Shown one piece after another: positions 5,416 to 63,086 of a stretch of DNA of 64,000 bases. A program made the position numbers and the translations under genes. Under the pieces are notes generated by a model, which saw only the letters and a program-made list of their open reading frames with translations, ran no database searches and was not told the origin of the DNA. Positions within the stretch are counted from its first letter, which is position 1, and each line of letters begins with the position of its first letter. The DNA is taken from positions 401,260 through 465,259 of IMG/VR virus record IMGVR_UViG_3300034072_000926; one strand, 5' to 3'.

Positions 5416-5446
5416 GCCTTACTATAGCGCAAGGTAGAACAGTTAA

Positions 5447-6480: not shown

Positions 6481-6484
6481 AGAT

Positions 6485-7196: not shown

Positions 7197-7243
7197 CCTG
7201 GTATATAGGTTTTCAACAAGGAGTCAACACCTAATCTCCTGAA

Positions 7244-47865: not shown

Positions 47866-49143
47866 TCAGTCCAACTCGCTCAGAAGGAATTTGTTCTCGA
47901 GATAGGGACGAAGCACCTCAGGGATACGTATCTCTCCGCCGTCCTGATAGTTCTCGAGCACCGCCACAAGTGTTCGACCAACAGCTAGACCACTACCGTT
48001 GAGGGTATGTGCGAAGACCGTGTGGCCATCAACCTTGTAGCGGGTATTCATGCGACGTGCTTGGAAATCGCCGCAGTTAGAGACGCTGCTGATCTCTCGA
48101 TACGCTTGCTGACCCGGAAGCCAGACCTCAATATCATAGGTCTTCTGTGCGCTGAAACCCATATCGCCCTTACAGAGCAACATCGTGCGATAAGGAAGAT
48201 CAAGACGAGCAAGGATCTGTTCAGCAGCATTCAGCATATAGTCATGCTCGCTGACACTTTGTTCGGGCTTGCAAATCGAAACCAATTCAACTTTCTGGAA
48301 CTGGTGTTGACGAATCAGCCCACGAGTATCACGACCTGCCGAGCCTGCCTCACTACGGAAGCAATCAGTCAATGCCACATAGCGATGCATCCCTAGCAGG
48401 ATTTCATCAGCATGGATATTGGTCAGGCTGACCTCGGCAGTGGGAATGAGATATTGTTCGGTTGCAAAGGCATCTTCGCTATTGGCAATTCCGAAGAGAT
48501 CATCTTTGAACTTGGGAAGCTGCCCAGTGCCGAATAGTGCTTCCTTGTTGACGATCACTGGAGGGATGACCTCGAGGAAGCCCCGCTCACGATGACTATC
48601 AAGCATGAACTGACCGAGGGCACGATGGAGACGAGCGACTGGACCCATCAACATGCTGAAGCGGGATCCGCTGATCTTCGCAGCACGGTCCATACCGAAT
48701 TGCAGGTCAAGTTCGTAATGAGGAACGGAGTTCTTGGGAAGGATGACGCCCCATTTGCGAACTTCTACATTGCTTGATTCGTTCGAGCCATCGGGAACAT
48801 CATCAGCCGCGATATTGGGACACTGTAGGAGATAGCCGTTGAGAACAAACTCACTGCTATTGGCCTGGTGCTCATATAGCTTGATATCGTCCTTCAGTTT
48901 CGCGATAATCGCTTTTAGCTCATCGACTTTCTCAAGGTCATTAGACTTCATAGCCAGACCAATATCCCCGCTGAGCTTTTTCAGAGCGGACTGCGCCTGC
49001 TGTTGCTTGGAAAGGAAGCCTCGACGATTCTCGTCATATTCGAGAATCTTATCCGTTTTTGGATCATGGCCTCGACTCTTCATAGCGTCAGTGAAGGCCT
49101 GTGGATTGTCCCTGATGGACTTGATATCGAAGTGATAATTCAT
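47866..49143 (-). CDS. serS: serine--tRNA ligase
   Basis: N-terminal coiled coil, LIPTAEV, FRSEAGSAGRDTRGLIRQHQFQKVE, EISSVSNC, TLNGSGLAVGRT. Confidence 0.96.
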   Translation of the reverse strand: MNYHFDIKSIRDNPQAFTDAMKSRGHDPKTDKILEYDENRRGFLSKQQQAQSALKKLSGDIGLAMKSNDLEKVDELKAIIAKLKDDIKLYEHQANSSEFVLNGYLLQCPNIAADDVPDGSNESSNVEVRKWGVILPKNSVPHYELDLQFGMDRAAKISGSRFSMLMGPVARLHRALGQFMLDSHRERGFLEVIPPVIVNKEALFGTGQLPKFKDDLFGIANSEDAFATEQYLIPTAEVSLTNIHADEILLGMHRYVALTDCFRSEAGSAGRDTRGLIRQHQFQKVELVSICKPEQSVSEHDYMLNAAEQILARLDLPYRTMLLCKGDMGFSAQKTYDIEVWLPGQQAYREISSVSNCGDFQARRMNTRYKVDGHTVFAHTLNGSGLAVGRTLVAVLENYQDGGEIRIPEVLRPYLENKFLLSELD

Positions 49144-49240
49144 ACCGCTTCGTAACATTGGTTACACTAGGCGTCAAGACTAGATTGGGTAGTCATGGTG
49201 AAACCCAGTTCGTTTCCGAACCGGGCCTCATGTATTTAGA

Positions 49241-50289
49241 GCAGGCTGAGATTACACCTACAAGCGAGTGTCTTTGGTCATTATCCCCGGCTTTGACACC
49301 GGTTTTCTCCCGTTATCCACTAAGCGTAGCCGAAGCATTCACCTAGTAACACTCAAAACCGCTTCCAATTTATATACCGCTGGCATTTGCGGTGTCCTAG
49401 TGATTTATCGGCAGCCTCTGTTCACGTCAGCCCTCGCAGACTGTTAAGGGGTTGCGGCCCCAACAAGAACTCTTCTACCAACACCTTTGAGGTCCCCCTC
49501 TCCAGTGCCTCTGTTAGCCTTAGCCCAGAGGATTGGGTTTCTTTTCTTCCATCGCTGGAAGTCACTAGCGAGTCAGGCTTTCGATTTTTATGCGTCAAGC
49601 ATAGCAAGTTTGACTGTAAACCCATTGCGATGTGCTGACTCAGTAGCTTCATTGGCTTTTGACCAACAAAATACTACACACCACGTATCTTTCGGCTTGC
49701 GACCTACTTGATGTTCTTTCAGGAATTGTCACAGGATTTGACTCCCATACCAACACCTTCAGAATGCCAATCGCCCTTGGTGCAACCTTCGGACTAATTG
49801 ACTATCTCTTACCACTAAGTAATGACCATATTTCGCTGGGAACGTCGGGTTGCGAAGCCCGTTGGATAGCCGCTCGTCGCCACTACCTTTATACCAACTT
49901 GCGTTGGAACAGTTGTCCTATGGTGTCCTACCTATCTCCACTGACCTGCAAGGCCTTGAAGAACTTCCTTTTGGGAAGTAGGTTGAGACTTGCTTGGTGA
50001 GACGACATTGCTATCGCGGAACCTATTGGGTTTCGGTTCCTTTCCACTAAGTTACCCTAGTGTCACTCTGTTAATGGCCCCAAGCGGCCAAACTTTCTAA
50101 CTCTGTAGTTGACCACTTTAACACCGAAGCGCCTTGTTGTCAACAACTTTGTTTCGATCGTTGCCTCTGCGGCACAACGCCCTACTTCTGATCAACTCTC
50201 ATCGTATCCCGCGGTCGGGAAATCCTTTCGGAAACCCCAGGCCTTGTTCTACTCCTGCTGACCTCTGTAGTGCGTTGCACCGCGTTGGT
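49241..50289 (-). ncRNA. large structured ncRNA, GOLLD-like
   Basis: ~1 kb without a credible ORF after a TTGACG-N17-TATAAC promoter; contains GGCGATTGGCATTCTGAAGGTGTTGGTATGGG and ends AGTGGATAA...GTGTAATCTCAGC, which match GOLLD motifs as I recall them. Confidence 0.65.
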
Positions 50290-50645
50290 CTAGCTGTTAT
50301 ATGCAAATAACCAGAGCGCGTCAACAACAAAAATAGATTATTTTGAAATTATTTTGCCCTGGTGCAAACCATAAGGATGGGCCCCAACAATCCTGAGAAT
50401 TGCTGGGACCCTAAGTAGGAACTGGGGGAGTTCCTACCCCGATGCGCTATTGTGTTTGGCTCACGAAGTCCAACCGACCTTAGGCTTCGGTATCCTGTCA
50501 ACGCTGCAATGCGACCTAGGAAAGCAACTCGCCGATCTAGCAAAACTTTCCAGAGAGCGCTAACAAGGATTAGCGTGTCGTATTACTAGAGCGATAAAAA
50601 TTAAGCAAATGAAAAATTGCGAACTATTTGAATCTTATATTTGAT

Positions 50646-51133
50646 ATGGTTAGGGCCTTAGAAACCTAAGTCTCTAAGGCCCAACCATCGAACCGAAGTT
50701 CTCTGGTTTTTGTCACCCTCGGTTCTTTCGCCTATCCCGAAGGATTAGCCAGGGAGTGCCGGAAGGTAACAAAACTCGGTTTAGGCCAGCTAGTTCAATA
50801 CCCACGAAAGGAAAGTTCTAGCTGGCCAACCAACAAAGACCTAAGTCTCTGTGGTATTCGTGTAGGTTTTCCTATATAGGCCAAAGCCACTAAACAGGAC
50901 CCTTGCACAAATTCGGTTTAGGGACCAGTCAATCCGAAAACTAACTGGTCCCAACCAACAAAGACCTAAGTCTCTGTGGTTTCTGTGCCAGTGATCTACT
51001 GTTGCTATGATCCGACCGAAGTCTTCTCAGGGAGTTCAGCAGTCTTTGCACAAAACTCGGGTTTAGGACAGTTGAGTGTTTATCCGGAGATTACTAACTC
51101 AACTGTCCAACCATCGAACCTAAGTTCTTTGGT
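50646..51133. repeat. array of four structured repeats with constant flanks and covarying stems
   Basis: units at about 50646-50707, 50778-50855, 50915-50980 and 51060-51133: GGTT(T)AGG-stem-loop-stem-CCAACCA plus a CCTAAG/CCGAAG hairpin ending TGGT. Confidence 0.8.
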
Positions 51134-51279
51134 ATCGGAAGGTTCTACGCGATTAACAAATCTAGTTAGCCGAAGCTTCTATTAAGTGTCACATCAGCGT
51201 GTGTGCGCTTCCGATAGCTGTTAAGTATGCGATGCCCGCAGAGTTTGCAAGTGGAGATTGCAAAAATTTTACAAAGACC

Positions 51280-51300
51280 TGTGCATAACTCTGTGGATTA
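51280..51300 (-). promoter_or_regulatory. two adjacent DnaA-box-like 9-mers
   Basis: TTATGCACA (fits TTWTNCACA) and TAATCCACA (one mismatch). Confidence 0.35.
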
Positions 51301-52110
51301 TTTCCGTTGGACCCGTCGACCTAGCAGAAGACCGGCACTCGCGAGACCAAACAGGAGAAGCATAGGTGGCGCAGGAACCGGCGTGGGATTGCCAGAACTT
51401 GTGCTGCCGCCCGATGAACTTGTCCAGTCGCCGCCGGTCGACGTTGAGGAACTGGAAGACGAACTGCTGGAAGAGCTCGAAGAAGACGAGCTACTCGAGG
51501 AAGAGCTGCTAGAACTACTCGACGACACGTTTCCAGAACTGCTCGTTACGTTTCCGCTCGAAGTTGACACGTTGCCACTCGAAGTTGAGACCCCTCCCGT
51601 TGAGCTTGAAACAGCCCCAGAGGAAGTGGACACACCGCCCGTAGACGTCGAGACACCGCCGGACGTAGAAGAGGTTGAACTTGAGATACCACCGGTGGAA
51701 CTACTCGTTGAGGAGATCACAACAGATCCGCCCCCACTACCACCGCCGCCGCCGAAGAAGCCGCCCATAAATCCACCGCTGCCGCCAAAGCCTCCTCCGT
51801 TCGCGACTGGAGCAGCACCGCCGCCGCTCGATCCGGACTGAACTGAAGCCTGCACAGGCAATACTGGAACTGGAGCAATGTTATTCACGACAGTGACCTG
51901 AACGGGCTGTGGTTTAACGACCTTTGTGGACTTTACGATATGTCGCTTACGGACAATGTGTCGCCGCACTGGTGCCTTGACCGACTTCCCTTTGGTGCTC
52001 TGAACATATGCAGGGCGTGGCTTCTGAGCAACATGAACTGCGCCACCCGCTAACAGAGCACCACCACAAGTGCAGGCACAGATCTTTGCTAGAGCCATAC
52101 GAACTGACAT
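51298..52110 (-). CDS. PEP-CTERM sorting-domain protein with Ser/Gly low-complexity tract
   Basis: C-terminal PVPAPPMLLLFGLASAGLLLGRR; N-terminus MSVRMALAKICACTCGG as I recall from sphingomonad PEP-CTERM proteins. Confidence 0.85.
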   Translation of the reverse strand: MSVRMALAKICACTCGGALLAGGAVHVAQKPRPAYVQSTKGKSVKAPVRRHIVRKRHIVKSTKVVKPQPVQVTVVNNIAPVPVLPVQASVQSGSSGGGAAPVANGGGFGGSGGFMGGFFGGGGGSGGGSVVISSTSSSTGGISSSTSSTSGGVSTSTGGVSTSSGAVSSSTGGVSTSSGNVSTSSGNVTSSSGNVSSSSSSSSSSSSSSSSSSSSSSSSSSSTSTGGDWTSSSGGSTSSGNPTPVPAPPMLLLFGLASAGLLLGRRVQRK

Positions 52111-52173
52111 AGATTCCTCCTATATACCTGTAATGTAATAGGATGACACCTTTGTCAACATTATTAAGAACCG

Positions 52174-52530
52174 TTAACTATTAAAAACCCAACCCGATTG
52201 GCTTGCCCGTTCGACCAGCTTACTGGTGAACTCCTTGATATAGTCGTCTGAGTCACAATTGCACGGCCACACCATGTCAGTATATTCGTTTGATATAACA
52301 TCCAAGAGATGTTCACGATCATATGTGTCGAGGGTTGGAGGAGTCTTTCGATCTTTCCAGTGTATTGCGATACGCTTTGGATAGCCGGTGATTAGCAGTC
52401 GAACCAGCTTTGGATCTTTGATTATGATCGCTGCCAAGAGTGCCTTGTTGGGAGCGACGAGACCTCGTTCACGCAAAGTATTGTCGCATATCTCGAGGTG
52501 ATGGGGTGCGAGGGTGCAGAGACGAGGCAT
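52174..52530 (-). CDS. hypothetical protein
   Basis: 118-aa ORF, TAATG coupling. Confidence 0.6.
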   Translation of the reverse strand: MPRLCTLAPHHLEICDNTLRERGLVAPNKALLAAIIIKDPKLVRLLITGYPKRIAIHWKDRKTPPTLDTYDREHLLDVISNEYTDMVWPCNCDSDDYIKEFTSKLVERASQSGWVFNS

Positions 52531-52721
52531 TATATCTTTCCTCTGGCTAGCAGTCGAACCCGTTCACGCGAGCATTCCTCAGGATTGGCGCGCATGAATT
52601 CAAGGATGGTCATGCCTTCACTATGTGCCCATCGAACCCATTTGGATTCAATGATGGCATCGATCTGTCGCTCGCCATAGCCAGCATCTCGCAATTCTTT
52701 GATCTCAGCGTTCTGGATCAT
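52530..52721 (-). CDS. hypothetical protein
   Basis: 63-aa ORF, GGAGGT SD, TTGACA promoter. Confidence 0.6.
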   Translation of the reverse strand: MIQNAEIKELRDAGYGERQIDAIIESKWVRWAHSEGMTILEFMRANPEECSRERVRLLARGKI

Positions 52722-52882
52722 TTATACCTCCTGTGCCTATTTCATAACATAGGATAGGAGTTTGTCAACCATTCATGATAACACCTCCGGACGAGGGGGA
52801 CTCAATCCGGAGGTGTATCGGTGAGAGGGTGTAAGTTCGCGCTCCTTACACGGCGGTCGCTACAGCGTCAAGCACTATTTCA

Positions 52883-54913: not shown

Positions 54914-55585
54914 TTACTTTATGGATCTGCCTAATGACCAACCATTGGATAGAAGATCAACTACATCAGATCCTTTTACTTTCTTCGGTCCTTCTTCAGG
55001 ATGACACATCCATTTTGAGCCGAATTGGGAATTACCAGAACCTGTTTGATGCTTTGAAGTATTGGCTCCGATTTTCTTCTTAGCCTCATCAGTATGTTCT
55101 AGACCAGTGAAAGTGCCTTTACGACCCTTAGTAACAGTCAATGCCTTTTGGCTCATTTTCAAAAGCTGGGTGCGAATCTCTGCATCGAACTCCGGATCTT
55201 CCTTACGACGTTCTGTCTGTAGTTGGTTCTTTTTGCGAGCGCCTGCAGGACAAGCAACAGCACGATTTCGGGCACGAACTTCGGGATTGTCGTTTATATA
55301 TTTGAAACCGTTTCCGCCCCAACCACCCGGTATTAGATTGTAACAGTTGTCAGACTTTAGCAGATCTTCTGTTATAAGTTCTCGCTCTTTCAAACGCATT
55401 TCATGTTCATCTTTACAATAGAACAGAATTTCCCGTTTGAAATTTTCTCGTCCATGTTTAGCGATTGCTTGACCTAAAAGTTTCCCAGATCCGAGATAAC
55501 CGTCGTCAATCTTTAATGTTTGATGCATCCCGATATAGAATTTTCCATTTAGGATGTTAGTCGTTTTGTAGATTATATAGAACAC
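54914..55585 (-). CDS. GIY-YIG homing endonuclease with NUMOD3-like motif
   Basis: IIYKTTNILNGKFYIG..YLGSG..FKREIL; HTDEAKKKIG; AT-rich. Confidence 0.9.
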   Translation of the reverse strand: MFYIIYKTTNILNGKFYIGMHQTLKIDDGYLGSGKLLGQAIAKHGRENFKREILFYCKDEHEMRLKERELITEDLLKSDNCYNLIPGGWGGNGFKYINDNPEVRARNRAVACPAGARKKNQLQTERRKEDPEFDAEIRTQLLKMSQKALTVTKGRKGTFTGLEHTDEAKKKIGANTSKHQTGSGNSQFGSKWMCHPEEGPKKVKGSDVVDLLSNGWSLGRSIK

Positions 55586-55630
55586 AAAATACCCGCAGTC
55601 ATTACTAACTGCGGGTATTTATTAAAGCGG

Positions 55631-55705
55631 CAGCGAGGGATGGGCTCGAACCACCGCCGACGATCTCTTCACAAGATCGCGCTCTACCAACTGAGCTACC
55701 CCGCT
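55631..55705 (-). tRNA. tRNA with 9-nt anticodon loop (TT-GTG-AAGA, His-like anticodon)
   Basis: AGCGGGG/CCTCGCT acceptor, GCTC/GAGC D-stem, CGATC/GATCG stem, GGTGG-TTCGAGC-CCATC; G73; no CCA. Confidence 0.65.
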
Positions 55706-55849
55706 ATGGTTGGGATGGAAGTTCTTCAAGTTTGGACAATTGCTTGTCCGCACAGGCATTTTACTTCCATCCCTCAGTGTGCGTCGCTGTAAGCTTGCAC
55801 ATCAGACCTTATTACTACAAGACTCTGATACAAGCGTCAACAACTATTT

Positions 55850-56551
55850 TCAGTCTTTCTTCACGCCCACAAAGCGGAGCAGGAAGAGGAAGAGATTGAG
55901 GAAGTCGAGGTAGAGGTTCAGCGCACCCATGACCACGATTCGACCCTTCGTATCACTGTCCATACGCGGGCTATAGGCTTCCTTGAGAGTCTGCGTATCC
56001 CAGGCAGTCAAGCCGGCGAAGATCAGGATACCCGCGATGCCGATGAACAAGTTCAGTCCAGTGCTGGGCATGAAAATGTTCAGGATCATGAGGCCCAGAA
56101 GACCGAACAAGCTGAAGATCAGGAAGCCACCGATTGGACCGAGGTCACGCTTGGTCGTGTAACCGTAGAGGCTACAGCCCGCAAAACCGATAGCAGCACC
56201 GAGGAATGCGAACAGAATCGAACCACCGGTATATTTGCTCAGGATCAGACCGAGACCCAGACCTTCGAGGATCACGAACGACCAGTAAAGGCCATGCAGC
56301 GTGGACAGTTTCATGCGCTCGACACCGAGGCTCATCGCGAACACCAAGGCTAGCGGCGACAGTGCGACGATCCAGAAAAGCAGACCGCCCTGCTTGAGAG
56401 TCTCGACCATACCGCTGATCTGTGCGAACCATGCAGCGCCGGCGCTGACGAGAAGACCCATGAGCATCAGATTGTAGATGCTCGTCATATAGTTGCGAAG
56501 GCCTTGGTCAACGGCCTCGCGTTCTGCAATATACATTCGTGAAACCTCCAT
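55850..56551 (-). CDS. Bax inhibitor-1/YccA family membrane protein
   Basis: multiple TM helices; YGYTTKRDL, AWDTQTLK, GALNLYLDFLNLFLFLLR. Confidence 0.92.
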   Translation of the reverse strand: MEVSRMYIAEREAVDQGLRNYMTSIYNLMLMGLLVSAGAAWFAQISGMVETLKQGGLLFWIVALSPLALVFAMSLGVERMKLSTLHGLYWSFVILEGLGLGLILSKYTGGSILFAFLGAAIGFAGCSLYGYTTKRDLGPIGGFLIFSLFGLLGLMILNIFMPSTGLNLFIGIAGILIFAGLTAWDTQTLKEAYSPRMDSDTKGRIVVMGALNLYLDFLNLFLFLLRFVGVKKD

Positions 56552-56598
56552 TTAGACTCACTCATACCACTATACAGGGTGGTAGGAAGGATGTCAAC

Positions 56599-56817
56599 CT
56601 ACTTGAACTTACCCTTCGGCCGAACGATGGTTGCGTTCTTGATATCAAGCGATGAGAAGAAGCCGTTCCGCTTCGAGAGTTCCTCGCGAGTGACTTTGCC
56701 CGACTTTAAGTCAGCTTCGTCTTTATCCCTCGCTGCCTGTTTCTCCGCCGCCCTCGCTTTCGGGTCGAATGTTCCTACGGATATAGGCTTTTTGGTTGAG
56801 GATTTCTTCTGGTTCAC
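56599..56817 (-). CDS. hypothetical basic protein
   Basis: 72-aa ORF, AAGGA SD. Confidence 0.55.
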   Translation of the reverse strand: MNQKKSSTKKPISVGTFDPKARAAEKQAARDKDEADLKSGKVTREELSKRNGFFSSLDIKNATIVRPKGKFK

Positions 56818-56971
56818 GGGGATGATCCTTTAGTCGCTCGATTATGGCTTGGAAGATCATTGGCTTCATGGAACCGAATGGCGCATTGATTCCACTCAGC
56901 TCTTCAAGTTGGTTCTCACAGAACCGAATGATCTCAATATCGGTTAGTGGATATTGGGCTAGATTTCGCAT
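56723..56971 (-). CDS. hypothetical protein
   Basis: 82-aa ORF overlapping the next by 95 nt. Confidence 0.45.
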   Translation of the reverse strand: MRNLAQYPLTDIEIIRFCENQLEELSGINAPFGSMKPMIFQAIIERLKDHPREPEEILNQKAYIRRNIRPESEGGGETGSEG

Positions 56972-57031
56972 ATCAGTGTCCTGAAAGTAATAAGACCATT
57001 ACGGTCAATAAGAAAGCCGCGACACCTTGTT

Positions 57032-57412
57032 TCATATCATCTTTTCCATAATAACATAGGTGCTGATAATCATAGCAAGATAACGCCAGTTGTTCCAACG
57101 CAAGGATTGCTTGATATAATACCAGTCCCTTAGTGAATCCTGACACCTCTGCGAATGATCTCGATAATCACCGTTGTGACGAATCACGTATTTCCCATTT
57201 TGGTAGCTGATACCCTGGAAGCCACTTCTCATATGCCTTCGTTCATTCTCTCGATGTGCTGCCGTTTCATCAGCATCAAAGGCAAGATTGGCGAAGATAC
57301 GAGTAGCATAATAGACAATGACCATCAGACAGATAAAGGTCTGGAGGTCTCTACCGTGCATACCCTGAAGGTATCCGAGGAATAGAGCGGCGGGGAGGAG
57401 AAGAAAGATCAT
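57032..57412 (-). CDS. membrane protein
   Basis: hydrophobic N- and C-terminal segments. Confidence 0.6.
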   Translation of the reverse strand: MIFLLLPAALFLGYLQGMHGRDLQTFICLMVIVYYATRIFANLAFDADETAAHRENERRHMRSGFQGISYQNGKYVIRHNGDYRDHSQRCQDSLRDWYYIKQSLRWNNWRYLAMIISTYVIMEKMI

Positions 57413-57654
57413 TTGATTTGAATTGCCGCTTGTCTACATTCTTGGAGGGAATCAATAGAAGCCCGTCCATAAGAGTTCTTCATAATCGTATCAACACATT
57501 GGAGATAGAAATCCCTTGTGGATTTCTTATCAGCAATTAGCCTATCCGAATTGGTTGGCATATCGCATGAACCTAGGACGACTAGACATAAAAGAAGACC
57601 GAAACGAGCAGAAGTCATAAAGTGACTATACTGTCGTTTCGGTCTGAAAATCAA
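57409..57654 (-). CDS. putative lipoprotein
   Basis: LLLCLVVLGSC lipobox-like sequence. Confidence 0.55.
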   Translation of the reverse strand: MIFRPKRQYSHFMTSARFGLLLCLVVLGSCDMPTNSDRLIADKKSTRDFYLQCVDTIMKNSYGRASIDSLQECRQAAIQIK

Positions 57655-57658
57655 TTTG

Positions 57659-57737
57659 TCCTAGATGTAGGAATCGAACCTACTCGTCTTTCGAAACCCG
57701 TTATGAGCGGGCAGGCTCCCCATTCGCCTTATCTAGG
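57659..57737 (-). tRNA. tRNA with CAU anticodon and long variable arm
   Basis: CCTAGAT/ATCTAGG, GCCCG-CT CAT AA-CGGGT, 12-nt variable region, GTAGG-TTCGATT-CCTAC; A8; no CCA. Confidence 0.7.
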
Positions 57738-57742
57738 ATGTT

Positions 57743-57879
57743 GTGACGGGCAAGTAATCGCTAATGGAATTTAGCCGGCTGCTCTAACCACCTGAGCTAC
57801 ACCGGGCCCTAAGACCCGATGAAGGGAGTCGAACCCTCGACACGCTGGTTGGGATAACCCATCAACTACGGCCCGTCAC
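57743..57879 (-). ncRNA. Y RNA-like element enclosing a circularly permuted tRNA (AT-CCC-AA loop, U73)
   Basis: GTGACGGGCCG..GGGTTATC / T-arm / acceptor closed by TTAG / D-arm / CTTGCCCGTCAC. Confidence 0.8.
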
Positions 57880-57937
57880 GTGTTCTTGATATGGTAAAAG
57901 GGCACTGTTGTCAAGCGCCCTTTTACCATAATGATTA

Positions 57938-58120
57938 TTAAATGTGGACGCCTGAGAGCAGTCCCGATTTCTGCAATAGAACCAGTAGGGCGATTACACC
58001 CACGACCAGTTTTGCTGGCATGTGGACAGGGGCCGGGAATGCCGAGTCAATGACCCAGAATGCACACCACACGATGGCCACAAAGATAACCAGCATTAGT
58101 AGAAGTGAAATGATATCCAT
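57938..58120 (-). CDS. small two-TM membrane protein
   Basis: 60 aa, two hydrophobic helices, AAGGAG SD. Confidence 0.7.
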   Translation of the reverse strand: MDIISLLLMLVIFVAIVWCAFWVIDSAFPAPVHMPAKLVVGVIALLVLLQKSGLLSGVHI

Positions 58121-58189
58121 GTCTTTTCTCCTTTTTCTGGATACTAATACTTACTAGGATAGGAGCGTGGTTAAACACATGGATCAAAA

Positions 58190-58218
58190 TGGTGCGCGCA
58201 GTGGGGGTCGAACCCACG
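58190..58218 (-). pseudogene. isolated tRNA 3' fragment (T-arm + acceptor strand + CCA)
   Basis: GTGGG-TTCGACC-CCCAC-TGCGCGC-A-CCA without a 5' half. Confidence 0.6.
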
Positions 58219-58224
58219 CTTGAG

Positions 58225-58298
58225 TGTCCCCAGTCGGATTCGAACCGACAACATGCGGGGTTTAAGGCCGCCGACTCTACCAGTTGGCCTATAGGGAC
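58225..58298 (-). tRNA. tRNA-Leu(UAA) with short variable loop
   Basis: GTCCCTA/TGGGGAC, CT-TAA-AC loop, GTCGG-TTCGAAT-CCGAC. Confidence 0.75.
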
Positions 58299-58307
58299 AT
58301 AAGTATT

Positions 58308-58392
58308 TGGTAGGCACGGTGGGACTCGAACCCACACGGATTAACCACACAATTTTAAGTCGTGCGCGTATGACCAATTTCGCCACGTGCCC
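58308..58392 (-). tRNA. tRNA-Leu(UAA)
   Basis: GGGCACG/CGTGCCT, GCG/CGC D-stem, CT-TAA-AA, extended variable region, A73, CCA. Confidence 0.88.
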
Positions 58393-58402
58393 ATGGAGAA
58401 GT

Positions 58403-58978
58403 ATGTCTAAGAACGAAGTGATAAAACAATTCGGCTACACATGTTCAGCTTGTAGCATATCTGAATGGATGGGTAAACCTATTTGTTTAGAGCTTGATCA
58501 CATCGATGGCAATAATCGAAACAATGAATTGTCGAATCTGCGTCTACTCTGTCCCAATTGTCACTCTCAGACAGAGACATTCAGAGGTCGCAATATCAAT
58601 AAAGGTGAGACTAAAGTTTCAGATGAGGATCTAGTCGAGGCTCTGACTTCGACGAAAAACATTCGTCAAGCCCTCATCAAGGTCGGTCTAACACCAAAGG
58701 GTATGAACTATCAGCGAGCTTCAAAACTTCTTAATCATCAATACCAAACGGTAGATAAGAATAATTCGCAATATGGATCAGTTTGGATCCATAATGGAAC
58801 TTCAAATAAGAAGATCAAAGCTGACTTACTTTCAGAATATCTCGAGCAAGGGTGGGTCAAAGGCAGGATCATGCTAACGAAAGCCCCATCACAACGCGGC
58901 AAGTTTTGGGTAACGAACGGTCTTCAAAACCGAATGGTTACTGAGATTCCTGAAGGATGGTGGAAAGGTATGTGTTAA
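58403..58978 (+). CDS. HNH homing endonuclease
   Basis: CSAC..LELDHIDGNNRNNELSNLRLLCPNCHS; inserted antisense next to tRNA-Leu. Confidence 0.9.
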   Translation: MSKNEVIKQFGYTCSACSISEWMGKPICLELDHIDGNNRNNELSNLRLLCPNCHSQTETFRGRNINKGETKVSDEDLVEALTSTKNIRQALIKVGLTPKGMNYQRASKLLNHQYQTVDKNNSQYGSVWIHNGTSNKKIKADLLSEYLEQGWVKGRIMLTKAPSQRGKFWVTNGLQNRMVTEIPEGWWKGMC

Positions 58979-58993
58979 GTCTCTACCTTTGGG

Positions 58994-59425
58994 CTATGCG
59001 CGCTTAACGTCCTCAACGGCTCGACGGAGAATGTCTTCCATCAGCGTATTGAACGTAATATCCCTCTTATGTGCTTCCTTGAATAGAAATAGAAGCAATT
59101 CGTCATCCAGATCGAGAGGTATCTGAACACGGAGATCGAAGGTCTTATTAGCCACGATGGCTTCGGCCTTCTCGACAAAGTCCTCAAGCACGTCAAGCTC
59201 AACAAACTCGATGCTCGTATCTAGCTGATCAGCTACGGCATCCTTATGATCTGGATCAATCCAACGATAAGCGAAGCTACCATGCTCATAATCGGGACGG
59301 GTCACAACAGTTAGGACACGAGTGCCATGACCCTGAACTACTCCGGCGGTCATTCTCGCAGTATCCTGATTCAGACCCTTGCTGGCCTGATCCACATACC
59401 AGTTATAGATTTCTGCTTCGTTCAT
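58994..59425 (-). CDS. hypothetical protein
   Basis: 143-aa ORF, RHH-like C-terminus, TAG stop. Confidence 0.65.
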   Translation of the reverse strand: MNEAEIYNWYVDQASKGLNQDTARMTAGVVQGHGTRVLTVVTRPDYEHGSFAYRWIDPDHKDAVADQLDTSIEFVELDVLEDFVEKAEAIVANKTFDLRVQIPLDLDDELLLFLFKEAHKRDITFNTLMEDILRRAVEDVKRA

Positions 59426-59446
59426 CTTGTTACCTCTTTATCTCAC

Positions 59447-60355
59447 CTACTTATTAGCAGGGTTAAGGTCAGAGGACAATCTTTCTTTCGCAAACTCGAT
59501 ATAATGTTCATCAACATCAAAGCCGAGCCAATCAAGACCTTCGGCTTGAGCCGCCACAGCACTGGTTCCTGTTCCCATAAAGGGGTCGAGGAGGGTTCCC
59601 TCGACGTTGCTGAACCTAATACAGCGACGAACCAATTCAACGGGGAAGGTTGCCGGATGAGAGCCCCTATGAGTCCCTCGACTAGCAATCGTTTCATACG
59701 GTATAAACCACACATTGCCGGGGCAATGTCGGTCGTCTACGGGCTTGGCTGATGCTAATTTGAGGGCTAGAGCGTCCTCGAGTGCAACCTTTTGCTCTTC
59801 GGTCGCATTCGCGTCATAGTCTCGCTTATCCTTCCATCCGGCTTTCTTGATCATACGACCACGCCAGCGGCCACTCTTGTCCAAGTTTGCTTTATCTGCA
59901 TATGGAACACCGACTGCCGATTTATTACAAGGGACATTGCCTGACTTTGTGAAGTGGAAGAGATGTTCCCATGTGGGATTTGCGAAACGCTCGCTATTGA
60001 TGGGCTTGTAATGACCCAATTGTTGATCATCGATTGCGATGCTTTTGGTCCAAATGAAATTGTTCTGTAGGACCATATGCTTGCGAGCTTCGTTGGCTAC
60101 ATCCATACCAACCCAGGGATCCACATTACTGTAGCCCATATTAAGCCAGAAATGTCCATCGGGTTTGAGCACTCGTTTCACTTCTGCGAAAACGCAAGAA
60201 AGCCACGTGAGATAATCCTCACGTGGCGTTGTATCTTGATATGTGGAATACTTGATTCCAAGATTATATGGAGGGCTAGTGACGCAGATATCTAGGGATT
60301 CTGCATCCAACTCTTTCAAACCCTCGAGGCAATCCTTCAGTTCTATTCTTCCCAT
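59447..60355 (-). CDS. beta-class amino DNA methyltransferase (N4-C/N6-A)
   Basis: VTSPPY, HPATFP, LLDPFMGTGTS. Confidence 0.92.
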   Translation of the reverse strand: MGRIELKDCLEGLKELDAESLDICVTSPPYNLGIKYSTYQDTTPREDYLTWLSCVFAEVKRVLKPDGHFWLNMGYSNVDPWVGMDVANEARKHMVLQNNFIWTKSIAIDDQQLGHYKPINSERFANPTWEHLFHFTKSGNVPCNKSAVGVPYADKANLDKSGRWRGRMIKKAGWKDKRDYDANATEEQKVALEDALALKLASAKPVDDRHCPGNVWFIPYETIASRGTHRGSHPATFPVELVRRCIRFSNVEGTLLDPFMGTGTSAVAAQAEGLDWLGFDVDEHYIEFAKERLSSDLNPANK

Positions 60356-60386
60356 ACATCTAATTAGCGATGTAGGAAAGTGAACT

Positions 60387-60557
60387 TTAGCCCAGGGTAG
60401 CGAGCTCCTCAGGGGTCAGCCGGCTCTTGATCTCTTCCACGGCTGCATTGATGCGAACCAGTTCGGGATGATCAGGCTGTTCCAGGCAGTCCAACCTCAA
60501 GCCATTCAGGCGAAGCTGGGCGTTGCGTAGGTGCTGAAGATTCGTTGCGTTGTTCAT
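60387..60557 (-). CDS. small hypothetical protein, 56 aa
   Basis: MNNATNLQHLRNAQLRL...; AGGAG SD; TTGCAA promoter; not in ORF track. Confidence 0.65.
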   Translation of the reverse strand: MNNATNLQHLRNAQLRLNGLRLDCLEQPDHPELVRINAAVEEIKSRLTPEELATLG

Positions 60558-60661
60558 GTATTCTCCTGTTGCTGGTCACGCATCAGTAGAACACAATTGC
60601 ATCCTTTGCAACCTAAAAATGTAACCGATTTAGTGACATGATTGGTTAGGAGCCTATAAGT

Positions 60662-60862
60662 ATGCAGAAACGCAACATACCCGAGGTGGGTTACATGTTC
60701 ATCCTACAATCACTTCTAGTTCTATATCTGACCGCAGCCATAGCAATGAGCGCAGCGCTCTGCAGGCATTATCCACAATTTATGGGATGGGCTAACGTGA
60801 GTCGCGGAATGGCTTGGCCAGTCACGATCTACGAAATCGTCTCAGGATTGATCGACGAATAA
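60662..60862 (+). CDS. small membrane protein
   Basis: hydrophobic segment; WPV motif. Confidence 0.5.
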   Translation: MQKRNIPEVGYMFILQSLLVLYLTAAIAMSAALCRHYPQFMGWANVSRGMAWPVTIYEIVSGLIDE

Positions 60863-60863
60863 G

Positions 60864-60953
60864 CGGGAAGCAGTGGAATTGAACCACTCACCTGTAGGGG
60901 TTATAGGTGCTCATAGCTTGAAGCCAGACTAGGACCATCCTAGCTTACTTCCC
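60864..60953 (-). tRNA. tRNA-Sec-like / allo-tRNA-like RNA, anticodon UCA
   Basis: GGGAAGT(A)/(T)GCTTCCC, 6-bp D-stem GCTAGG/CCTAGT with 5-nt loop, CT-TCA-AG, long variable arm CACCT/AGGTG, G73; anticodon stem weak. Confidence 0.7.
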
Positions 60954-61154
60954 AGGTTGCAAGCGATCATAGAACGTCCTCAAGAGATCGTTCGACATCT
61001 TTGCATAATAAGAACGCGGATAGTTGGTTGCAATGTGGTTGAGCTGATTACTCAGCATCTTTGCATCATCGGCTGAGATTTGACGATCATTGATCCAATC
61101 GCTTCCGTTGTGGTTGCGAAGCCAATAATTCTTATTCAATTCCCAAAGACGCAT
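60945..61154 (-). CDS. small protein starting MRLWEL after a TAAATA motif
   Basis: GGAGG SD; its stop codon overlaps the 5' end of the UCA tRNA. Confidence 0.6.
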   Translation of the reverse strand: MRLWELNKNYWLRNHNGSDWINDRQISADDAKMLSNQLNHIATNYPRSYYAKMSNDLLRTFYDRLQPGK

Positions 61155-61177
61155 AATATCCTCCACGTTCAGGATAT

Positions 61178-61453
61178 TTAGCGTTCTGGGCGATGCTCAA
61201 CTGTCCAACCAGGAAGCTCTCTTTGTAGCCTCTTGTGAAGGTTTGCGCCTTGTTTGTTGAATCCCTTGAGATCAAAGGGACGTTTGCGGTCCTCGACGTC
61301 TAGGTAGAATTCACTCTGTTCATACCAAAGCGTCCACTTATAGATATCATCGAAGAGTCGCTGACTGATGGGGAGTTCCTCGAGGTCCATCATGCTACCG
61401 TCTTTACTCCAAACACCACTGCTGGAATAATCGGCCATCAACTTAACGAACAT
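61178..61453 (-). CDS. hypothetical protein
   Basis: start MFVKLMADY after AAGGAG; the upstream ORF-track extension runs through an RNA gene. Confidence 0.65.
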   Translation of the reverse strand: MFVKLMADYSSSGVWSKDGSMMDLEELPISQRLFDDIYKWTLWYEQSEFYLDVEDRKRPFDLKGFNKQGANLHKRLQRELPGWTVEHRPER

Positions 61454-61462
61454 TGGAACTCC

Positions 61463-61706
61463 TTTTGAGGGCAAGTTTTGTGCTGGCCTTTCTTCCGCTG
61501 CGTCTGCCAATTCCGCCACCTCGCCCATCAACTGCCTTGGATACAACAGCAATTATGATCTTGCGTATCCATTCTTGTCTTACTGTCCTAGGCGGATTTT
61601 AGCCGGAGACCTAGTCCAAGACAGATGGTGGGGAGGGAAGGACTCGAACCTTCATGACTTTAGTCCACGGTCTTACATCGATAACCCAGAACTTCGGCCC
61701 TCAAAA
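61463..61706 (-). ncRNA. Y RNA-like element enclosing a permuted tRNA-Tyr-like domain (GTA, long variable arm, A73-CCA)
   Basis: TTTTGAGGGCCGAAG..GGGTTATC, 3' half ending CCTCCCC-A-CCA, ~95-nt linker, 5' half GGCGAGG-TG-GCG..CGC, CTTGCCCTCAAAA. Confidence 0.78.
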
Positions 61707-61715
61707 CGATCTAAA

Positions 61716-61858
61716 AGTTCGACGGGCAAGTGTTGCGAAGGACCTTTTTCAGCGTCCTATCCACTAGACGATCCCCGCACAATGGAGCGGGGACTGGGAT
61801 TCGAACCCAGGTTTCCGGCTTGACATGCGATAACCCTTTGCTATCGGCCCGTCGAACT
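61716..61858 (-). ncRNA. Y RNA-like element enclosing a permuted tRNA (AT-GTC-AA loop, Gly-like acceptor, CCA)
   Basis: AGTTCGACGGGCCGA..GGGTTATC, T-arm CTGGG/CCCAG, TCCCCGC-T-CCA-TTGT-GCGGGGA, D-arm, CTTGCCCGTCGAACT. Confidence 0.82.
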
Positions 61859-61894
61859 AATGACTTTATACACTGGCATCTAACCAGTGTCAAG

Positions 61895-61963
61895 TGCTCT
61901 AGGAGGGATTCGAACCCACAAGAGTCGCTTTAGGAGAGCAACGTCCGTCCAGTCGGCTAGAGC
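61895..61963 (-). tRNA. tRNA-Arg(CCU)-like with shortened D region
   Basis: GCTCTAG/CTAGAGC, TTGCT-CT CCT AA-AGCGA; only 15 nt between acceptor and anticodon stems. Confidence 0.6.
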
Positions 61964-61974
61964 ATAAGTAGAAT

Positions 61975-62283
61975 ATGTTTAGATATCTTCAACCCGGTGA
62001 AAAGGGCGACTATTGGGGAACCTCAAGTCTCCTTGAATGGCTTACAAAGCTTCTAAAAGGTCATGTTGTTCCGGAAGATGCAACTGTTCAGCACATTGAA
62101 TTCTTTCTTCAAGAATATTATGCCAATGCACAGAAAACAGGCCCATATGCTATAATCACTTTCTATCCTTCATCTATCCGATATTTGGGTCCTGAAGGAG
62201 TAGACGGGACTACCTTTGATGCTCATCGAATCAATATCAATTACGATACTAATCGAGTTATTCAAAGTATTAGCTTAGGGTAA
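61975..62283 (+). CDS. hypothetical protein
   Basis: AT-rich 102-aa ORF antisense within the tRNA island; C-terminus resembles small protease-inhibitor motifs (RININYD..VIQSISLG). Confidence 0.6.
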   Translation: MFRYLQPGEKGDYWGTSSLLEWLTKLLKGHVVPEDATVQHIEFFLQEYYANAQKTGPYAIITFYPSSIRYLGPEGVDGTTFDAHRININYDTNRVIQSISLG

Positions 62284-62284
62284 G

Positions 62285-62356
62285 TGGTCCTACCAAGATT
62301 CGAACTTGGGCTTACGCTTTCGTAGAGCGTCGTGATATCCATTTCACTATAGGACC
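62285..62356 (-). tRNA. tRNA-Arg(ACG)
   Basis: GGTCCTA/TAGGACC, GTGA/TCAC D-stem, ACGCT-CT ACG AA-AGCGT. Confidence 0.88.
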
Positions 62357-62361
62357 ATGGG

Positions 62362-62466
62362 TGACGAGCAAGTGGAGGATTCCGTGCGCTCCCAATTGAG
62401 CTAACCGTTGTTCGTGAACAACGATTGGAGTCGAACCAATGATAACGGAAGCCAATCGGCTCGTCA
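62362..62466 (-). ncRNA. YrlA-type Y RNA (T-arm, closed acceptor-like stem, D-arm, no anticodon)
   Basis: TGACGAGCCGA..CGTTATC-ATTGG-TTCGACT-CCAAT-CGTTGTT-CACG-AACAACG..GCTC/GAGC..CTTGCTCGTCA; compensatory change in the terminal stem. Confidence 0.82.
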
Positions 62467-62472
62467 TTTGTT

Positions 62473-62633
62473 TGAACCCCGAGGCCAGTTTCCGCACCTG
62501 GCTCCTTTCATCTCCGTCCATCTTCTCAAGATGGTGAGCTCGCCCAACAAACTTCAAAGATACTCGATTGGGGCGAAGGCCATCGATTGCCTAGCCTGAT
62601 CCGCTCTTTTTCTGAGAAGCTTCAAGGGGTTCA
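62473..62633 (-). ncRNA. candidate structured RNA within the tRNA island
   Basis: closed by TGAACCCC/GGGGTTCA; internal hairpins CCATCTT/AAGATGG, GCCAG/CTGGC, CGCCC/GGGCG. Confidence 0.45.
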
Positions 62634-62634
62634 G

Positions 62635-62705
62635 TGCTCTGAGAGAGAATCGAACTCTCGTTGGCGGGTTACGAATCCGCTATCTTACCACTAAATGACC
62701 AGAGC
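62635..62705 (-). tRNA. tRNA-Thr(CGU)
   Basis: GCTCTGG/TCAGAGC, TT-CGT-AA loop, GAGAG-TTCGATT-CTCTC. Confidence 0.78.
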
Positions 62706-62710
62706 GTGGT

Positions 62711-62784
62711 TGGTGCCGGCTAAGGGAATCGAACCCTTGATTGATGCTTACAAGGCAACTGTTATACCATTTAACTAAGCCGGC
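62711..62784 (-). tRNA. tRNA-Thr(UGU)
   Basis: GCCGGCT/AGCCGGC, GTTA/TAAC, CT-TGT-AA, A73-CCA. Confidence 0.88.
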
Positions 62785-62789
62785 ATTTT

Positions 62790-62923
62790 CCATAGTTTGT
62801 GATCAGACCAGTGACCGCCACGGTTGAGCGTCTGTCTAGCGTCCTTCGTGTAAAAACTCTAGATACTACTGCCTAAGCGGGTAGCCTAATCCGCCCAGAT
62901 TACTCCGAACGAACCAACTATGG
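62790..62923 (-). ncRNA. candidate structured RNA
   Basis: 8-bp terminal inverted repeat CCATAGTT/AACTATGG; ORF-free; lies between tRNAs. Confidence 0.35.
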
Positions 62924-63017
62924 AAGAAACAAAGAGCCTCGCAGCGCATTACTTCTGTAAACTCTTTGTTTCCGATCTGGACTCTACAGCAGTACATCCG
63001 TGCTGTCAAGTCCATAG

Positions 63018-63086
63018 AGGCCCTGTCGAGACTCGAACTCGACATCAGACGTTCGAAGCGTCCGGGCTAGATCCACTAGCAGGGCC
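63018..63086 (-). tRNA. tRNA-Arg(UCG)-like with shortened D region
   Basis: GGCCCTG/CAGGGCC, GGACG-CT TCG AA-CGTCT, TCGAG/CTCGA; 16 nt between acceptor and anticodon stems. Confidence 0.6.

What the first reader, a model, noticed from the sequence alone, without database searches (positions are those of the whole stretch)
49241..50289. ~1 kb GOLLD-like giant ncRNA upstream of serS
Seen: near-consensus promoter (50296-50324), ~1050 nt with no credible ORF, many hairpins with GAAA/GCAA/UUCG loops, and a terminator-like hairpin at 49201-49227. Recalled: the motifs GGCGATTGG..CTGAAGG.TGTTGGT.TGGG and AGTGGATAA..GTGTAATCTCAGC match GOLLD RNAs, which occur near phage tRNA clusters and have no known function. 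This copy would be at the long end of the family and lies co-directionally upstream of serS.
Basis: partly seen in the sequence, partly recalled or inferred. Interest (0 to 1): 0.68.

Follow-up and report, generated by a model that had tools for sequence, protein, structure and literature searches.

The report
Giant GOLLD RNA in jumbo phage
The 1 kb gene-free stretch upstream of serS in this 465 kb phage encodes an unusually long member of the GOLLD family, large phage RNAs known to self-assemble into hollow cages of unknown function; it is a separate gene, not a serS leader, and a second, undescribed structured RNA lies just upstream.

Summary
Window 49243-49684 (- strand) matches the whole Rfam GOLLD model (416/416 positions, E 2e-41). 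Its score of 149.6 bits is 0.4 below the gathering score, so a default scan misses it. Orthologues in three relatives score 164-187 bits.

The ~400 nt upstream (50093-49690) is the family's variable 5' domain. A further ~195 nt (50289-50094) is a clade-specific 5' extension. From the predicted start the RNA is ~1047 nt.

Across four phages, 238 consensus pairs are 93% canonical (about 40% in slid controls), and 84 show compensatory changes. No internal ORF survives in relatives. Promoter hexamers and the 3' hairpin are conserved.

One public library holds a single 1025-nt molecule (49245-50269) at depth 139 with adapters at both ends and nothing on serS. Two metatranscriptomes hold almost only GOLLD-internal contigs.

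GOLLD-serS adjacency is not conserved, and serS has its own promoter-like site.

The likely mechanism, inferred from solved GOLLDs, is a homo-oligomeric RNA cage. The L14 A-loop, the covarying J13/15-L20 pairing and the L27 loop are all present. The linker holds no tRNA.

Upstream (about 51215-50643) lies an unreported RNA of four tandem three-hairpin modules, conserved in three jumbo phages.

The parts
50319..50324 (-). -35 hexamer TTGACG of the GOLLD promoter, preceded by an AT-rich stretch
   Evidence: Sequence. TTGA is kept in G002, TTGACG in G001 and TTGCAA in Phosso, at the same distance from the -10.
50296..50301 (-). -10 hexamer TATAAC, 17-nt spacer. Predicted start at about 50290-50288.
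   Evidence: TATAA(C/G) is conserved in all four phages while the spacer is free to vary. The last base is never T, so the scan does not list it.
50094..50289 (-). Clade-specific 5' extension: one long branched hairpin (closing stem 50283-50272 with 50181-50169) and a second hairpin (50157-50096)
   Evidence: Present in G002, shortened to ~106 nt in G001 and ~55 nt in Phosso. For window plus G002: 53 pairs, 100% canonical, 5 double changes. Covered by RNA-library contigs up to 50269 and 50240.
49690..50093 (-). GOLLD 5' domain (variable domain; forms the cap of the cage in solved structures)
   Evidence: nhmmer match to Phosso at E 9e-9. 102 consensus pairs, 40 with compensatory changes. An iterated profile links it to the region directly upstream of the 3' domain in 8 other GOLLD loci. 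Family core motif present.
49243..49684 (-). GOLLD conserved 3' domain, Rfam RF02032 positions 1-416 (P13/P14 hairpin to P27)
   Evidence: 149.6 bits, E 2.3e-41 and 1.2e-42 in the genome. 117 consensus pairs, 40 compensatory.
49656..49662 (-). L14 loop UCAAAAG (A-run that makes inter-subunit A-minor bridge B6 in env-38)
   Evidence: Aligned to the model's UCAAAAG. The role comes from the literature.
49592..49617 (-). Linker: a 26-nt hairpin with no tRNA
   Evidence: No tRNA called here. MD18 and DSS3_MAL1 have tRNA-Arg(UCU) and Phosso a tRNA-like insert at this place.
49562..49568 (-). J13/15 strand CUAGUGA of the long-range pairing
   Evidence: Pairs with 49403-49397. Covaries: G002 CUUGC/GCAGG, G001 CUUACG/CGUAAG. 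Pseudoknot brackets in the Rfam model.
49397..49403 (-). L20 strand UCACUAG, partner of J13/15 (bridge B7 in env-38)
49243..49258 (-). P27/L27 (GGUGUAAUCUCAGCCU), the conserved 3' terminal element
   Evidence: alignment. Conserved in all four phages.
49200..49225 (-). Conserved 3' hairpin with GAAA loop and a short U tract (weak terminator or 3' protective hairpin)
   Evidence: Pair-preserving changes in G001 and G002. Phosso has a canonical terminator here. The RNA-library molecule ends just before it, at 49245.
49245..50269 (-). Extent of the single abundant molecule seen in public run X5
   Evidence: A 1070-nt contig at depth 138.6 with 1 mismatch, Illumina adapters abutting both ends and flanks at depth 0.
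49149..49177 (-). Promoter-like site of the downstream gene: TTGACG-17-TACGAA
   Evidence: TTGAC(A/G) is kept after the GOLLD hairpin in G002 and G001, where a different gene follows. Inference only.
47866..49143 (-). serS (seryl-tRNA synthetase); likely start is ATG 49143. Not part of the RNA.
   Evidence: TIGR00414, 461.6 bits against a cut-off of 301.65. The N-terminus MNYHFDIKS matches MKYHFDIKS in G002.
50643..51215 (-). Neighbouring separate element: undescribed structured RNA of four tandem three-hairpin modules (units 51133-51047, 50980-50904, 50855-50765, 50709-50643), with its own promoter-like site TTGCAA (51250-51245), 17 nt, TACTTA (51227-51222)
   Evidence: 159 consensus pairs, 91.9% canonical (32-45% when slid), 34 with double changes (1-6 when slid). 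No Rfam match.

Best explanation
Window about 50289 to 49243 (- strand) is an independently transcribed gene for a GOLLD-family non-coding RNA of about 1.03-1.05 kb, carried by a 465 kb jumbo phage.

Shown here: it has the complete conserved GOLLD 3' domain, the family's variable 5' domain, a clade-specific 195-nt 5' extension and a minimal 26-nt linker with no tRNA. It is conserved as a structure, not as a coding sequence. It appears in RNA libraries as a discrete abundant molecule that does not extend into serS.

Inferred from solved GOLLD structures: the RNA folds without protein and self-assembles into a dihedral homo-oligomeric cage. The 3' domains form the ring and join the two half-shells. 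The 5' domains form the caps and set the number of subunits. The linker points into the interior. The elements solved GOLLDs use for this are present: the L14 A-run, the covarying J13/15-L20 pairing and the L27 loop. My estimate that it forms such a multimer is about 0.7. The enlarged 5' end may change the cap geometry or the copy number.

Speculative: the cage acts on the translation apparatus during infection, sequestering or scaffolding tRNAs or ribosomes, in keeping with its place beside a large tRNA island and serS (about 0.3). Because this copy has no embedded tRNA, tRNA storage cannot be its only role.
For: Rfam GOLLD match over 416/416 positions, 149.6 bits, E 2e-41. Orthologues score 186.6 (Phosso), 171.1 (G002) and 164.1 (G001) bits.

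Four-phage consensus: 238 pairs, 92.8% canonical against 37-42% when partners are slid, 84 pairs with double changes against 10-19. The opposite strand gives 76% canonical and half the energy.

The 5' domain is homologous to those of other GOLLDs. The J13/15-L20 pairing covaries. Internal ORFs are broken in relatives. Promoter hexamers and the 3' hairpin are conserved.

Run X5 holds one 1025-nt molecule at depth 139 with adapters at both ends and flanks at 0. Metatranscriptomes X16 and X17 hold almost only GOLLD-internal contigs.

Cage assembly, bridge identities and the role of the 5' domain come from the literature.
Against: The score is 0.4 bits under Rfam's gathering cut-off. Multimer formation was not and cannot be tested here, and the helix numbering of the 5' domain (P1-P12) could not be mapped onto this sequence.

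X5 is only guessed to be RNA, so the adapter-flanked molecule could be an amplicon or a synthetic transcript. Contigs cannot show strand, level or true ends. The X5 5' end (50269) is 20 nt inside the predicted start and cuts a conserved covarying stem, so at least one end is technical or processed.

Only four sequences support the covariation, and three of them are close relatives. The function of any GOLLD is unknown.
Confidence: 0.85

Rival explanations
1. GOLLD and the upstream four-module RNA are made as one long precursor (about 1.9 kb or more) that is then cut into pieces, so the GOLLD promoter is secondary.
For: Same strand. Adjacent in the window and in G002 with no strong terminator between them. 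X6 has contigs on both elements.
Against: GOLLD has its own promoter, with conserved hexamers, in all four phages, including Phosso, which lacks the array. In G001 a 376-aa ORF separates the two. X5, X16 and X17 hold GOLLD but not the array.
Confidence: 0.12
2. Only the 442-nt 3' part is the GOLLD RNA, and the upstream 600 nt is a separate RNA or an untranslated spacer.
For: The Rfam model covers only 49243-49684. An internal promoter-like site (50143-50115) exists.
Against: One contig at uniform depth spans 49245-50269, and an X16 contig (50083-50240) crosses the internal site. The 5' domain is homologous to the region directly upstream of the 3' domain in other GOLLDs. The Rfam model is known to cover only the conserved half. 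Promoter-like hits in this region are at chance level: 4 found, 4.0 expected.
Confidence: 0.05
3. It is a cis-acting leader or attenuator that controls serS, like a T-box.
For: It lies directly upstream of serS in the same direction, and its terminator hairpin has a weak U tract.
Against: No T-box or other cis-regulatory family matched even at E 10. G002 has a 239-aa gene between GOLLD and serS. G001 has a 239-aa ORF there, with no serS in the 7 kb fetched, and the Phosso locus has no serS. A TTGAC promoter-like site follows the hairpin in all three jumbo phages. X5 shows depth 139 on GOLLD and 0 on serS.
Confidence: 0.02
4. It is a decaying, non-functional remnant of a GOLLD gene, which is why it falls under the Rfam cut-off.
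For: The score is just under gathering. There is no tRNA in the linker.
Against: The full model length is matched. 84 compensatory pairs show selection on structure. The promoter and 3' hairpin are conserved. It is abundant in RNA libraries.
Confidence: 0.02

Closest known systems
GOLLD env-38 (marine metagenome; 833 nt; cryo-EM 14-mer cage, PDB 9MEE)
   Same: Same family by the Rfam 3' domain. 5' domain followed by linker followed by 3' domain. L14 A-run, J13/15-L20 pairing and L27 loop. Phage context near tRNA genes.
   Different: Ours is about 200 nt longer owing to a 5' extension ahead of the canonical 5' domain. The sequence is highly diverged. Subunit number is unknown. Ours is not directly downstream of a tRNA.
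Streptococcus agalactiae GOLLD (700 nt; 12-mer, PDB 9L0R; 3' domain alone forms a 10-mer)
   Same: Same conserved 3' domain. It shows that the 5' domain's size and shape set the stoichiometry.
   Different: The S. agalactiae RNA has a reduced 5' domain (lacks P9, P11a-c and P21b), while ours is enlarged. The host is a Gram-positive bacterium.
Unannotated GOLLDs of Sinorhizobium phage Phosso (469 kb) and Roseobacter phages MD18 and DSS3_MAL1
   Same: Closest sequence relatives among isolates. The P13/P14 hairpin is 77-84% identical. The Phosso 5' domain is homologous. Same promoter type in Phosso.
   Different: They carry a tRNA (Arg-UCU, or tRNA-like in Phosso) in the linker, while ours has a 26-nt hairpin. 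They lack the long 5' extension and, by the module pattern, the upstream array RNA. MD18 and DSS3_MAL1 have a tmRNA gene just downstream.
Mycobacterial GOLLDs inside tRNA arrays (tRNA-Phe embedded in J13/15)
   Same: Association with large tRNA islands.
   Different: Chromosomal or plasmid tRNA arrays with an embedded tRNA. Ours is in a lytic-type jumbo phage genome and has no embedded tRNA.
ROOL RNA (phage or prophage RNA; 8-mer cage)
   Same: A large phage-borne RNA near tRNA islands that forms an RNA-only cage. It may work in a similar way.
   Different: Unrelated sequence and fold. No ROOL match in this region at E 10.

Membership tests
GOLLD RNA (Rfam RF02032) | Conserved 3' domain matching the covariance model at or above the gathering score (150 bits) | tested here: inconclusive
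   149.6 bits, E 2.3e-41, model positions 1-416 of 416. That is 0.4 bits below the curated cut-off, so it is absent from the gathering scan. Orthologues in G001, G002 and Phosso score 164-187 bits. Statistically unambiguous, but formally just under threshold.
GOLLD RNA (Rfam RF02032) | Long-range pairing J13/15-L20 (pseudoknot in the model; inter-subunit bridge B7 in the structure) | tested here: met
   CUAGUGA/UCACUAG in the window. Compensatory versions at the same aligned position in G002 (CUUGC/GCAGG) and G001 (CUUACG/CGUAAG). Phosso also has a complementary pair, placed further 3' because of its tRNA-bearing linker.
GOLLD RNA (Rfam RF02032) | Conserved loops L14 (A-run) and L27 (GUAAUCUCA) | tested here: met
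   UCAAAAG at 49662-49656 and GUGUAAUCUCAGC at 49256-49244 align to the model consensus.
GOLLD RNA (Rfam RF02032) | A structured, less conserved 5' domain of about 400 nt directly upstream of the 3' domain | tested here: met
   102 consensus pairs, 40 compensatory. The iterated profile reaches 8 other GOLLD loci at the same relative position. Core motif shared.
GOLLD RNA (Rfam RF02032) | Variable linker between P13/14 and J13/15, sometimes holding a tRNA | tested here: met
   A 26-nt hairpin here. tRNA-Arg in MD18 and DSS3_MAL1, and a tRNA-like insert in Phosso.
GOLLD RNA (Rfam RF02032) | Phage or prophage location near tRNA genes | tested here: met
   465 kb virus record. Nine tRNAs lie 5-14 kb upstream on the same strand. 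They continue, across the record ends, into an array of at least 18 tRNAs. They are not immediately adjacent.
GOLLD RNA (Rfam RF02032) | Expressed as a stable non-coding RNA | tested here: inconclusive
   A discrete 1025-nt molecule in X5 and GOLLD-internal contigs in two metatranscriptomes. X5's library type is a guess, and contigs show neither strand nor level.
GOLLD RNA (Rfam RF02032) | Protein-free homo-oligomeric cage (10-, 12- or 14-mer) | not testable with these tools
   Known for env-38 and S. agalactiae GOLLD. There is no RNA 3D or multimer tool here.
T-box or other cis-regulatory leader of an aminoacyl-tRNA synthetase gene | Match to a leader family, and conserved linkage to the regulated gene | tested here: not met
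   No such Rfam match at E 10 in 48800-50800. serS adjacency is absent in G001 and Phosso and interrupted in G002.
ROOL RNA | Match to the ROOL covariance model | tested here: not met
   No match at E 10 over 48800-52200.

The most novel reading that the evidence does not exclude
This locus is a two-gene island of giant non-coding RNAs that work together. One is a GOLLD whose extra 195-nt 5' module gives a cage with a new cap or subunit number. The other is a previously undescribed RNA of about 570 nt or more, built from four tandem three-hairpin modules. That RNA is confined to this clade of 435-465 kb phages and serves as partner, cargo or assembly regulator of the cage. The structured-RNA status of the array is well supported (about 0.8). 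The functional link and the altered cage are not.
Probability: 0.2. Interest if true: 0.75.

Novelty: new member of a known kind. Interest (0 to 1): 0.45.

Why it matters
GOLLD is one of the few natural RNAs known to build large protein-free cages, and nobody knows what the cages are for. This copy matters in three ways.

First, it and its relatives sit at or just under the Rfam cut-off, so routine annotation misses them in the largest known phages.

Second, it is a natural size variant. It has a 195-nt 5' extension, a minimal linker and no embedded tRNA, and can be compared with Phosso (cultured, tRNA in the linker, short 5' end). That offers a direct test of two ideas: that the 5' domain sets the subunit number, and that the linker tRNA is cargo.

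Third, Phosso infects a tractable host (Sinorhizobium meliloti), so deleting its GOLLD is a realistic experiment.

The neighbouring four-module RNA is a candidate new family of phage RNA.

Tried and rejected
1. The default Rfam gathering scan found no GOLLD. Only the E-value scan did.

2. Internal promoter 50143-50115: rejected. RNA contigs span it, the upstream extension is conserved and covaries, and hits of this kind are at chance level.

3. I read the 'ACCA' at each array module boundary as tRNA-like acceptor ends. Rejected: the consensus fold pairs ACCA with the UGGU of UGGUUGG to close a hairpin, and ARAGORN finds no tRNA there.

4. Searches for more relatives:
- the 5'-domain motif in viral contigs gave 0
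- the junction motif gave only G002 in viral contigs and 0 in metagenomes
- the array pattern in metagenomes gave 44 loci, all chance
- L126 and L127 are chance hits inside a coding gene
- blastn of the array against isolated phages gave no match.

5. Stop-codon recoding suggested by the CUA-anticodon tRNA: no sign of it. TAG ends 57 of 309 long ORFs.

6. The first MAFFT alignment placed Phosso's linker tRNA against our J13/15. By eye, Phosso's AAAAACGCAAAGACUG after the tRNA is the true equivalent.

7. Helix-by-helix mapping to P1-P27, and to the L21a/L21b kissing loops, was not possible without the published alignment, which I could not load into the tools.

8. No covariance model of the array module was built, because MAFFT misaligns the variable hairpin.

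Full report
**What the window is.** The window is the last 64 kb of a 465,259-bp virus record that CheckV rates complete. GC content is about 50% and most genes are on the - strand. It holds ten tRNA genes, all on the - strand, and a full-length seryl-tRNA synthetase gene (TIGR00414, 461.6 bits against a cut-off of 301.65). The closest isolated relative found is Sinorhizobium phage Phosso (469 kb). A published Sinorhizobium jumbo phage, AP-J-162 (471.5 kb), similarly carries 66 tRNAs, a CUA-anticodon tRNA, a tmRNA and one 'misc RNA' (PMC11242549).

**Checking the observation.**
- The promoter is TTGACG, 17 nt, TATAAC (50324-50296). The consensus scan misses it because the -10 ends in C.
- The hexamers are kept while the spacer diverges in three relatives, which is how a real promoter evolves.
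- The four longest internal ORFs (74-113 aa) carry 1-7 in-frame stops, and mostly frameshifts, in every relative. The two short ones in the 5' extension are broken in G002, and most of that stretch is missing in G001 and Phosso.
- The interval 49159-51226 is the third-largest ORF-free stretch in the genome. The largest is a tRNA array.

**The direct test.** The default Rfam scan reports only tRNAs. With permissive filters, GOLLD (RF02032) matches 49243-49684 on the - strand over all 416 model positions, at 149.6 bits and E 2.3e-41. It is the only such match in the genome. The score is 0.4 bits under the gathering cut-off of 150. The same element scores 186.6 bits in Phosso, 169.6 in Phaeobacter phage MD18, 160.5 in DSS3_MAL1, 171.1 in a 462-kb IMG/VR phage (G002) and 164.1 in a 436-kb one (G001).

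**The other 600 nt.** The Rfam model covers only the conserved half of GOLLD. The literature describes a variable 5' domain, a variable linker and a conserved 3' domain.
- The 415 nt upstream of the model match align with the corresponding part of Phosso (E 9e-9).
- A profile of four subtype members, iterated over other GOLLD-bearing viral loci, recruits the 385-400 nt directly upstream of their 3' domains. L028 comes in at 2e-19, DSS3_MAL1 at 3e-7 and L019 at 2e-6 before they were added to the profile.
- So 50093-49690 is the GOLLD 5' domain.
- The 195 nt before it (50289-50094) are shared only with G002. They are shortened to about 106 nt in G001 and about 55 nt in Phosso.

**Structure and strand.** RNAalifold on the four full-length sequences gives 238 pairs.
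- 92.8% of cells are canonical, against 37-42% when partners are slid by 1-3 columns.
- 84 pairs carry changes on both sides, against 10-19 in the slid controls.
- Read on the opposite strand, the same pairs are only 76% canonical and the consensus energy halves.
- The 5' and 3' domains contribute 40 compensatory pairs each.
- The extension, testable only against G002, has 53 pairs, all canonical, with 5 double changes. Two of these are in the terminal stem 50283-50272 with 50181-50169.

**Elements used for cage assembly.** In solved GOLLDs the L14 A-run makes an A-minor bridge. J13/15 pairs with L20 of a neighbouring chain. L27 organises the 3' domain core. Here L14 is UCAAAAG and L27 is GUAAUCUCA. 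The J13/15-L20 pairing is CUAGUGA/UCACUAG, replaced by CUUGC/GCAGG in G002 and CUUACG/CGUAAG in G001. Phosso also has a complementary pair after its tRNA insert. The linker is a 26-nt hairpin with no tRNA, whereas MD18 and DSS3_MAL1 carry tRNA-Arg(UCU) and Phosso a tRNA-like insert at that spot.

**Expression.** Twenty public runs from 15 studies hold part of the 2.2-kb stretch. I laid four runs on 47300-52800.
- X5 holds a single 1070-nt contig at depth 138.6 that equals 49245-50269 with one mismatch. Illumina adapter sequence abuts both ends, and serS and the upstream region have no coverage.
- X16 (wastewater metatranscriptome) holds four contigs between 49563 and 50240 and two small pieces further upstream.
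- X17 holds 49633-50066 from a relative.
- X6 covers more, including the upstream RNA and the flanking genes.

This fits a discrete, abundant RNA of at least 1025 nt that does not continue into serS.

Caveats: X5's library type is a guess, so the molecule could be an amplicon. Contigs give no strand or level. The 5' end at 50269 cuts a covarying stem, so the true 5' end is probably nearer 50289.

**Relation to serS.**
- G002 has a 239-aa gene between GOLLD and serS.
- G001 has a 239-aa ORF after GOLLD, with no serS in the 7 kb fetched.
- The Phosso locus has no serS.
- A TTGAC(A/G) promoter-like site follows the GOLLD hairpin in all three jumbo phages.
- No cis-regulatory family matches.

The adjacency in this genome therefore looks like the result of a gene loss, not a regulatory coupling.

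**Mechanism.** Shown: a structured, conserved, independently promoted GOLLD RNA gene. Inferred from the family: protein-free assembly into a dihedral cage, with 3' domains forming the ring and 5' domains the caps. The subunit number depends on the 5' domain: 10 for the 3' domain alone, 12 for S. agalactiae and 14 for env-38. The enlarged 5' end here might therefore change the cage. Function remains unknown for the whole family. Given the position beside a tRNA island and serS, I favour a role in handling translation components. The missing linker tRNA shows that tRNA storage cannot be the general explanation.

**The neighbour.** Directly upstream (about 51215-50643, - strand) are four tandem modules. 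Each has a hairpin closed by ACCA/UGGU, then a variable hairpin flanked by the invariant UGGUUGG and CCUAAACC, then a third hairpin.
- The array has its own promoter-like site resembling the GOLLD one (TTGCAA-17-TACTTA, followed by AACAGCTA).
- It is conserved in G001 and G002.
- It shows 159 consensus pairs that are 91.9% canonical (32-45% when slid), with 34 double changes (1-6 when slid).
- It occurs once in the genome and matches no Rfam family.
- It is absent from Phosso, MD18 and DSS3_MAL1 by pattern and from isolated phages by blastn.
- In G001 a 376-aa ORF lies between it and GOLLD, so the two are separable units.

**Verdict.** It is a new, unusually long, sub-threshold member of a known family, and it is not linked to serS. 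The more novel item is the companion RNA upstream.

Noticed in passing
window 50643-51250 (- strand): Undescribed structured RNA made of four tandem three-hairpin modules (invariant UGGUUGG and CCUAAACC around a covarying hairpin), with its own promoter-like site. It is conserved in two other 435-462 kb phages, has no Rfam match and occurs at no other place in the genome.
   Followed up: yes
window 50378-50585 (- strand): Between the array and the GOLLD promoter lies a further block conserved with G002 (CTAGATCGG...GTTGGACTTCGTGAGCCAAACAC), followed by two hairpins whose stems covary (GGGTCCCAGCAATTCTCAGGATTGTTGGGGCCC against GGGCTCCTGGTGAGAAATCATCGGGGGCCC). It is absent in G001. It could be the 3' part of the array RNA or a third small RNA.
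   Followed up: partly
window 40312-40388 (- strand): A tRNA with a CUA anticodon (amber suppressor; ARAGORN labels it Pyl). TAG still ends 57 of 309 long ORFs in the genome, so there is no sign of recoding. A similar tRNA is reported in Sinorhizobium phage AP-J-162.
   Followed up: partly
window 49141-49158: The serS ORF as listed starts at ATG 49158. The N-terminus conserved with G002 (M-N/K-YHFDIKS) starts at ATG 49143, which would lie only a few bases after the predicted start of a TTGACG-17-TACGAA promoter. That suggests a nearly leaderless mRNA.
   Followed up: partly
window 54914-55705: A GIY-YIG type homing endonuclease gene (phrog_314, E 2e-42) sits directly beside tRNA-Ser(UGA). The phage thus carries both SerRS and a tRNA-Ser.
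   Followed up: no
L130 4161-5291 (G001): In the 436-kb relative a 376-aa ORF lies between the array RNA and the GOLLD promoter. Its C-terminal part looks like a T5orf172 or GIY-YIG-type domain by eye. It is probably a mobile-gene insertion.
   Followed up: partly
G000:C1:52807-54967 (outside the window; L176): A second ORF-free stretch of 2.1 kb in the same phage genome, with no Rfam match at E 0.01. It may hold another unknown RNA.
   Followed up: no
G000:C1:about 4000-7200 (L175) and window 55629-63086: An array of at least 18 tRNA genes at the start of the record, on the same strand as the window's tRNA cluster at the end of the record. On a circular or permuted map they form one large tRNA island just upstream of the two RNA genes.
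   Followed up: partly
window 49563 and 49616: Contigs from two wastewater metatranscriptomes (X6, X16) match the GOLLD down to 49563 and then diverge completely. They also carry an extra T after 49616. Strains therefore differ from the J13/15 strand onward, the part whose pairing partner covaries.
   Followed up: no
L002 4090-4161 (Phosso): The tRNA-like insert in the Phosso GOLLD linker scores 54 bits with the Rfam tRNA model but is not called by ARAGORN. Its anticodon loop reads CUUCUAA (UCU, Arg), as in MD18 and DSS3_MAL1. The GOLLD itself is not annotated in any of the three GenBank records.
   Followed up: partly
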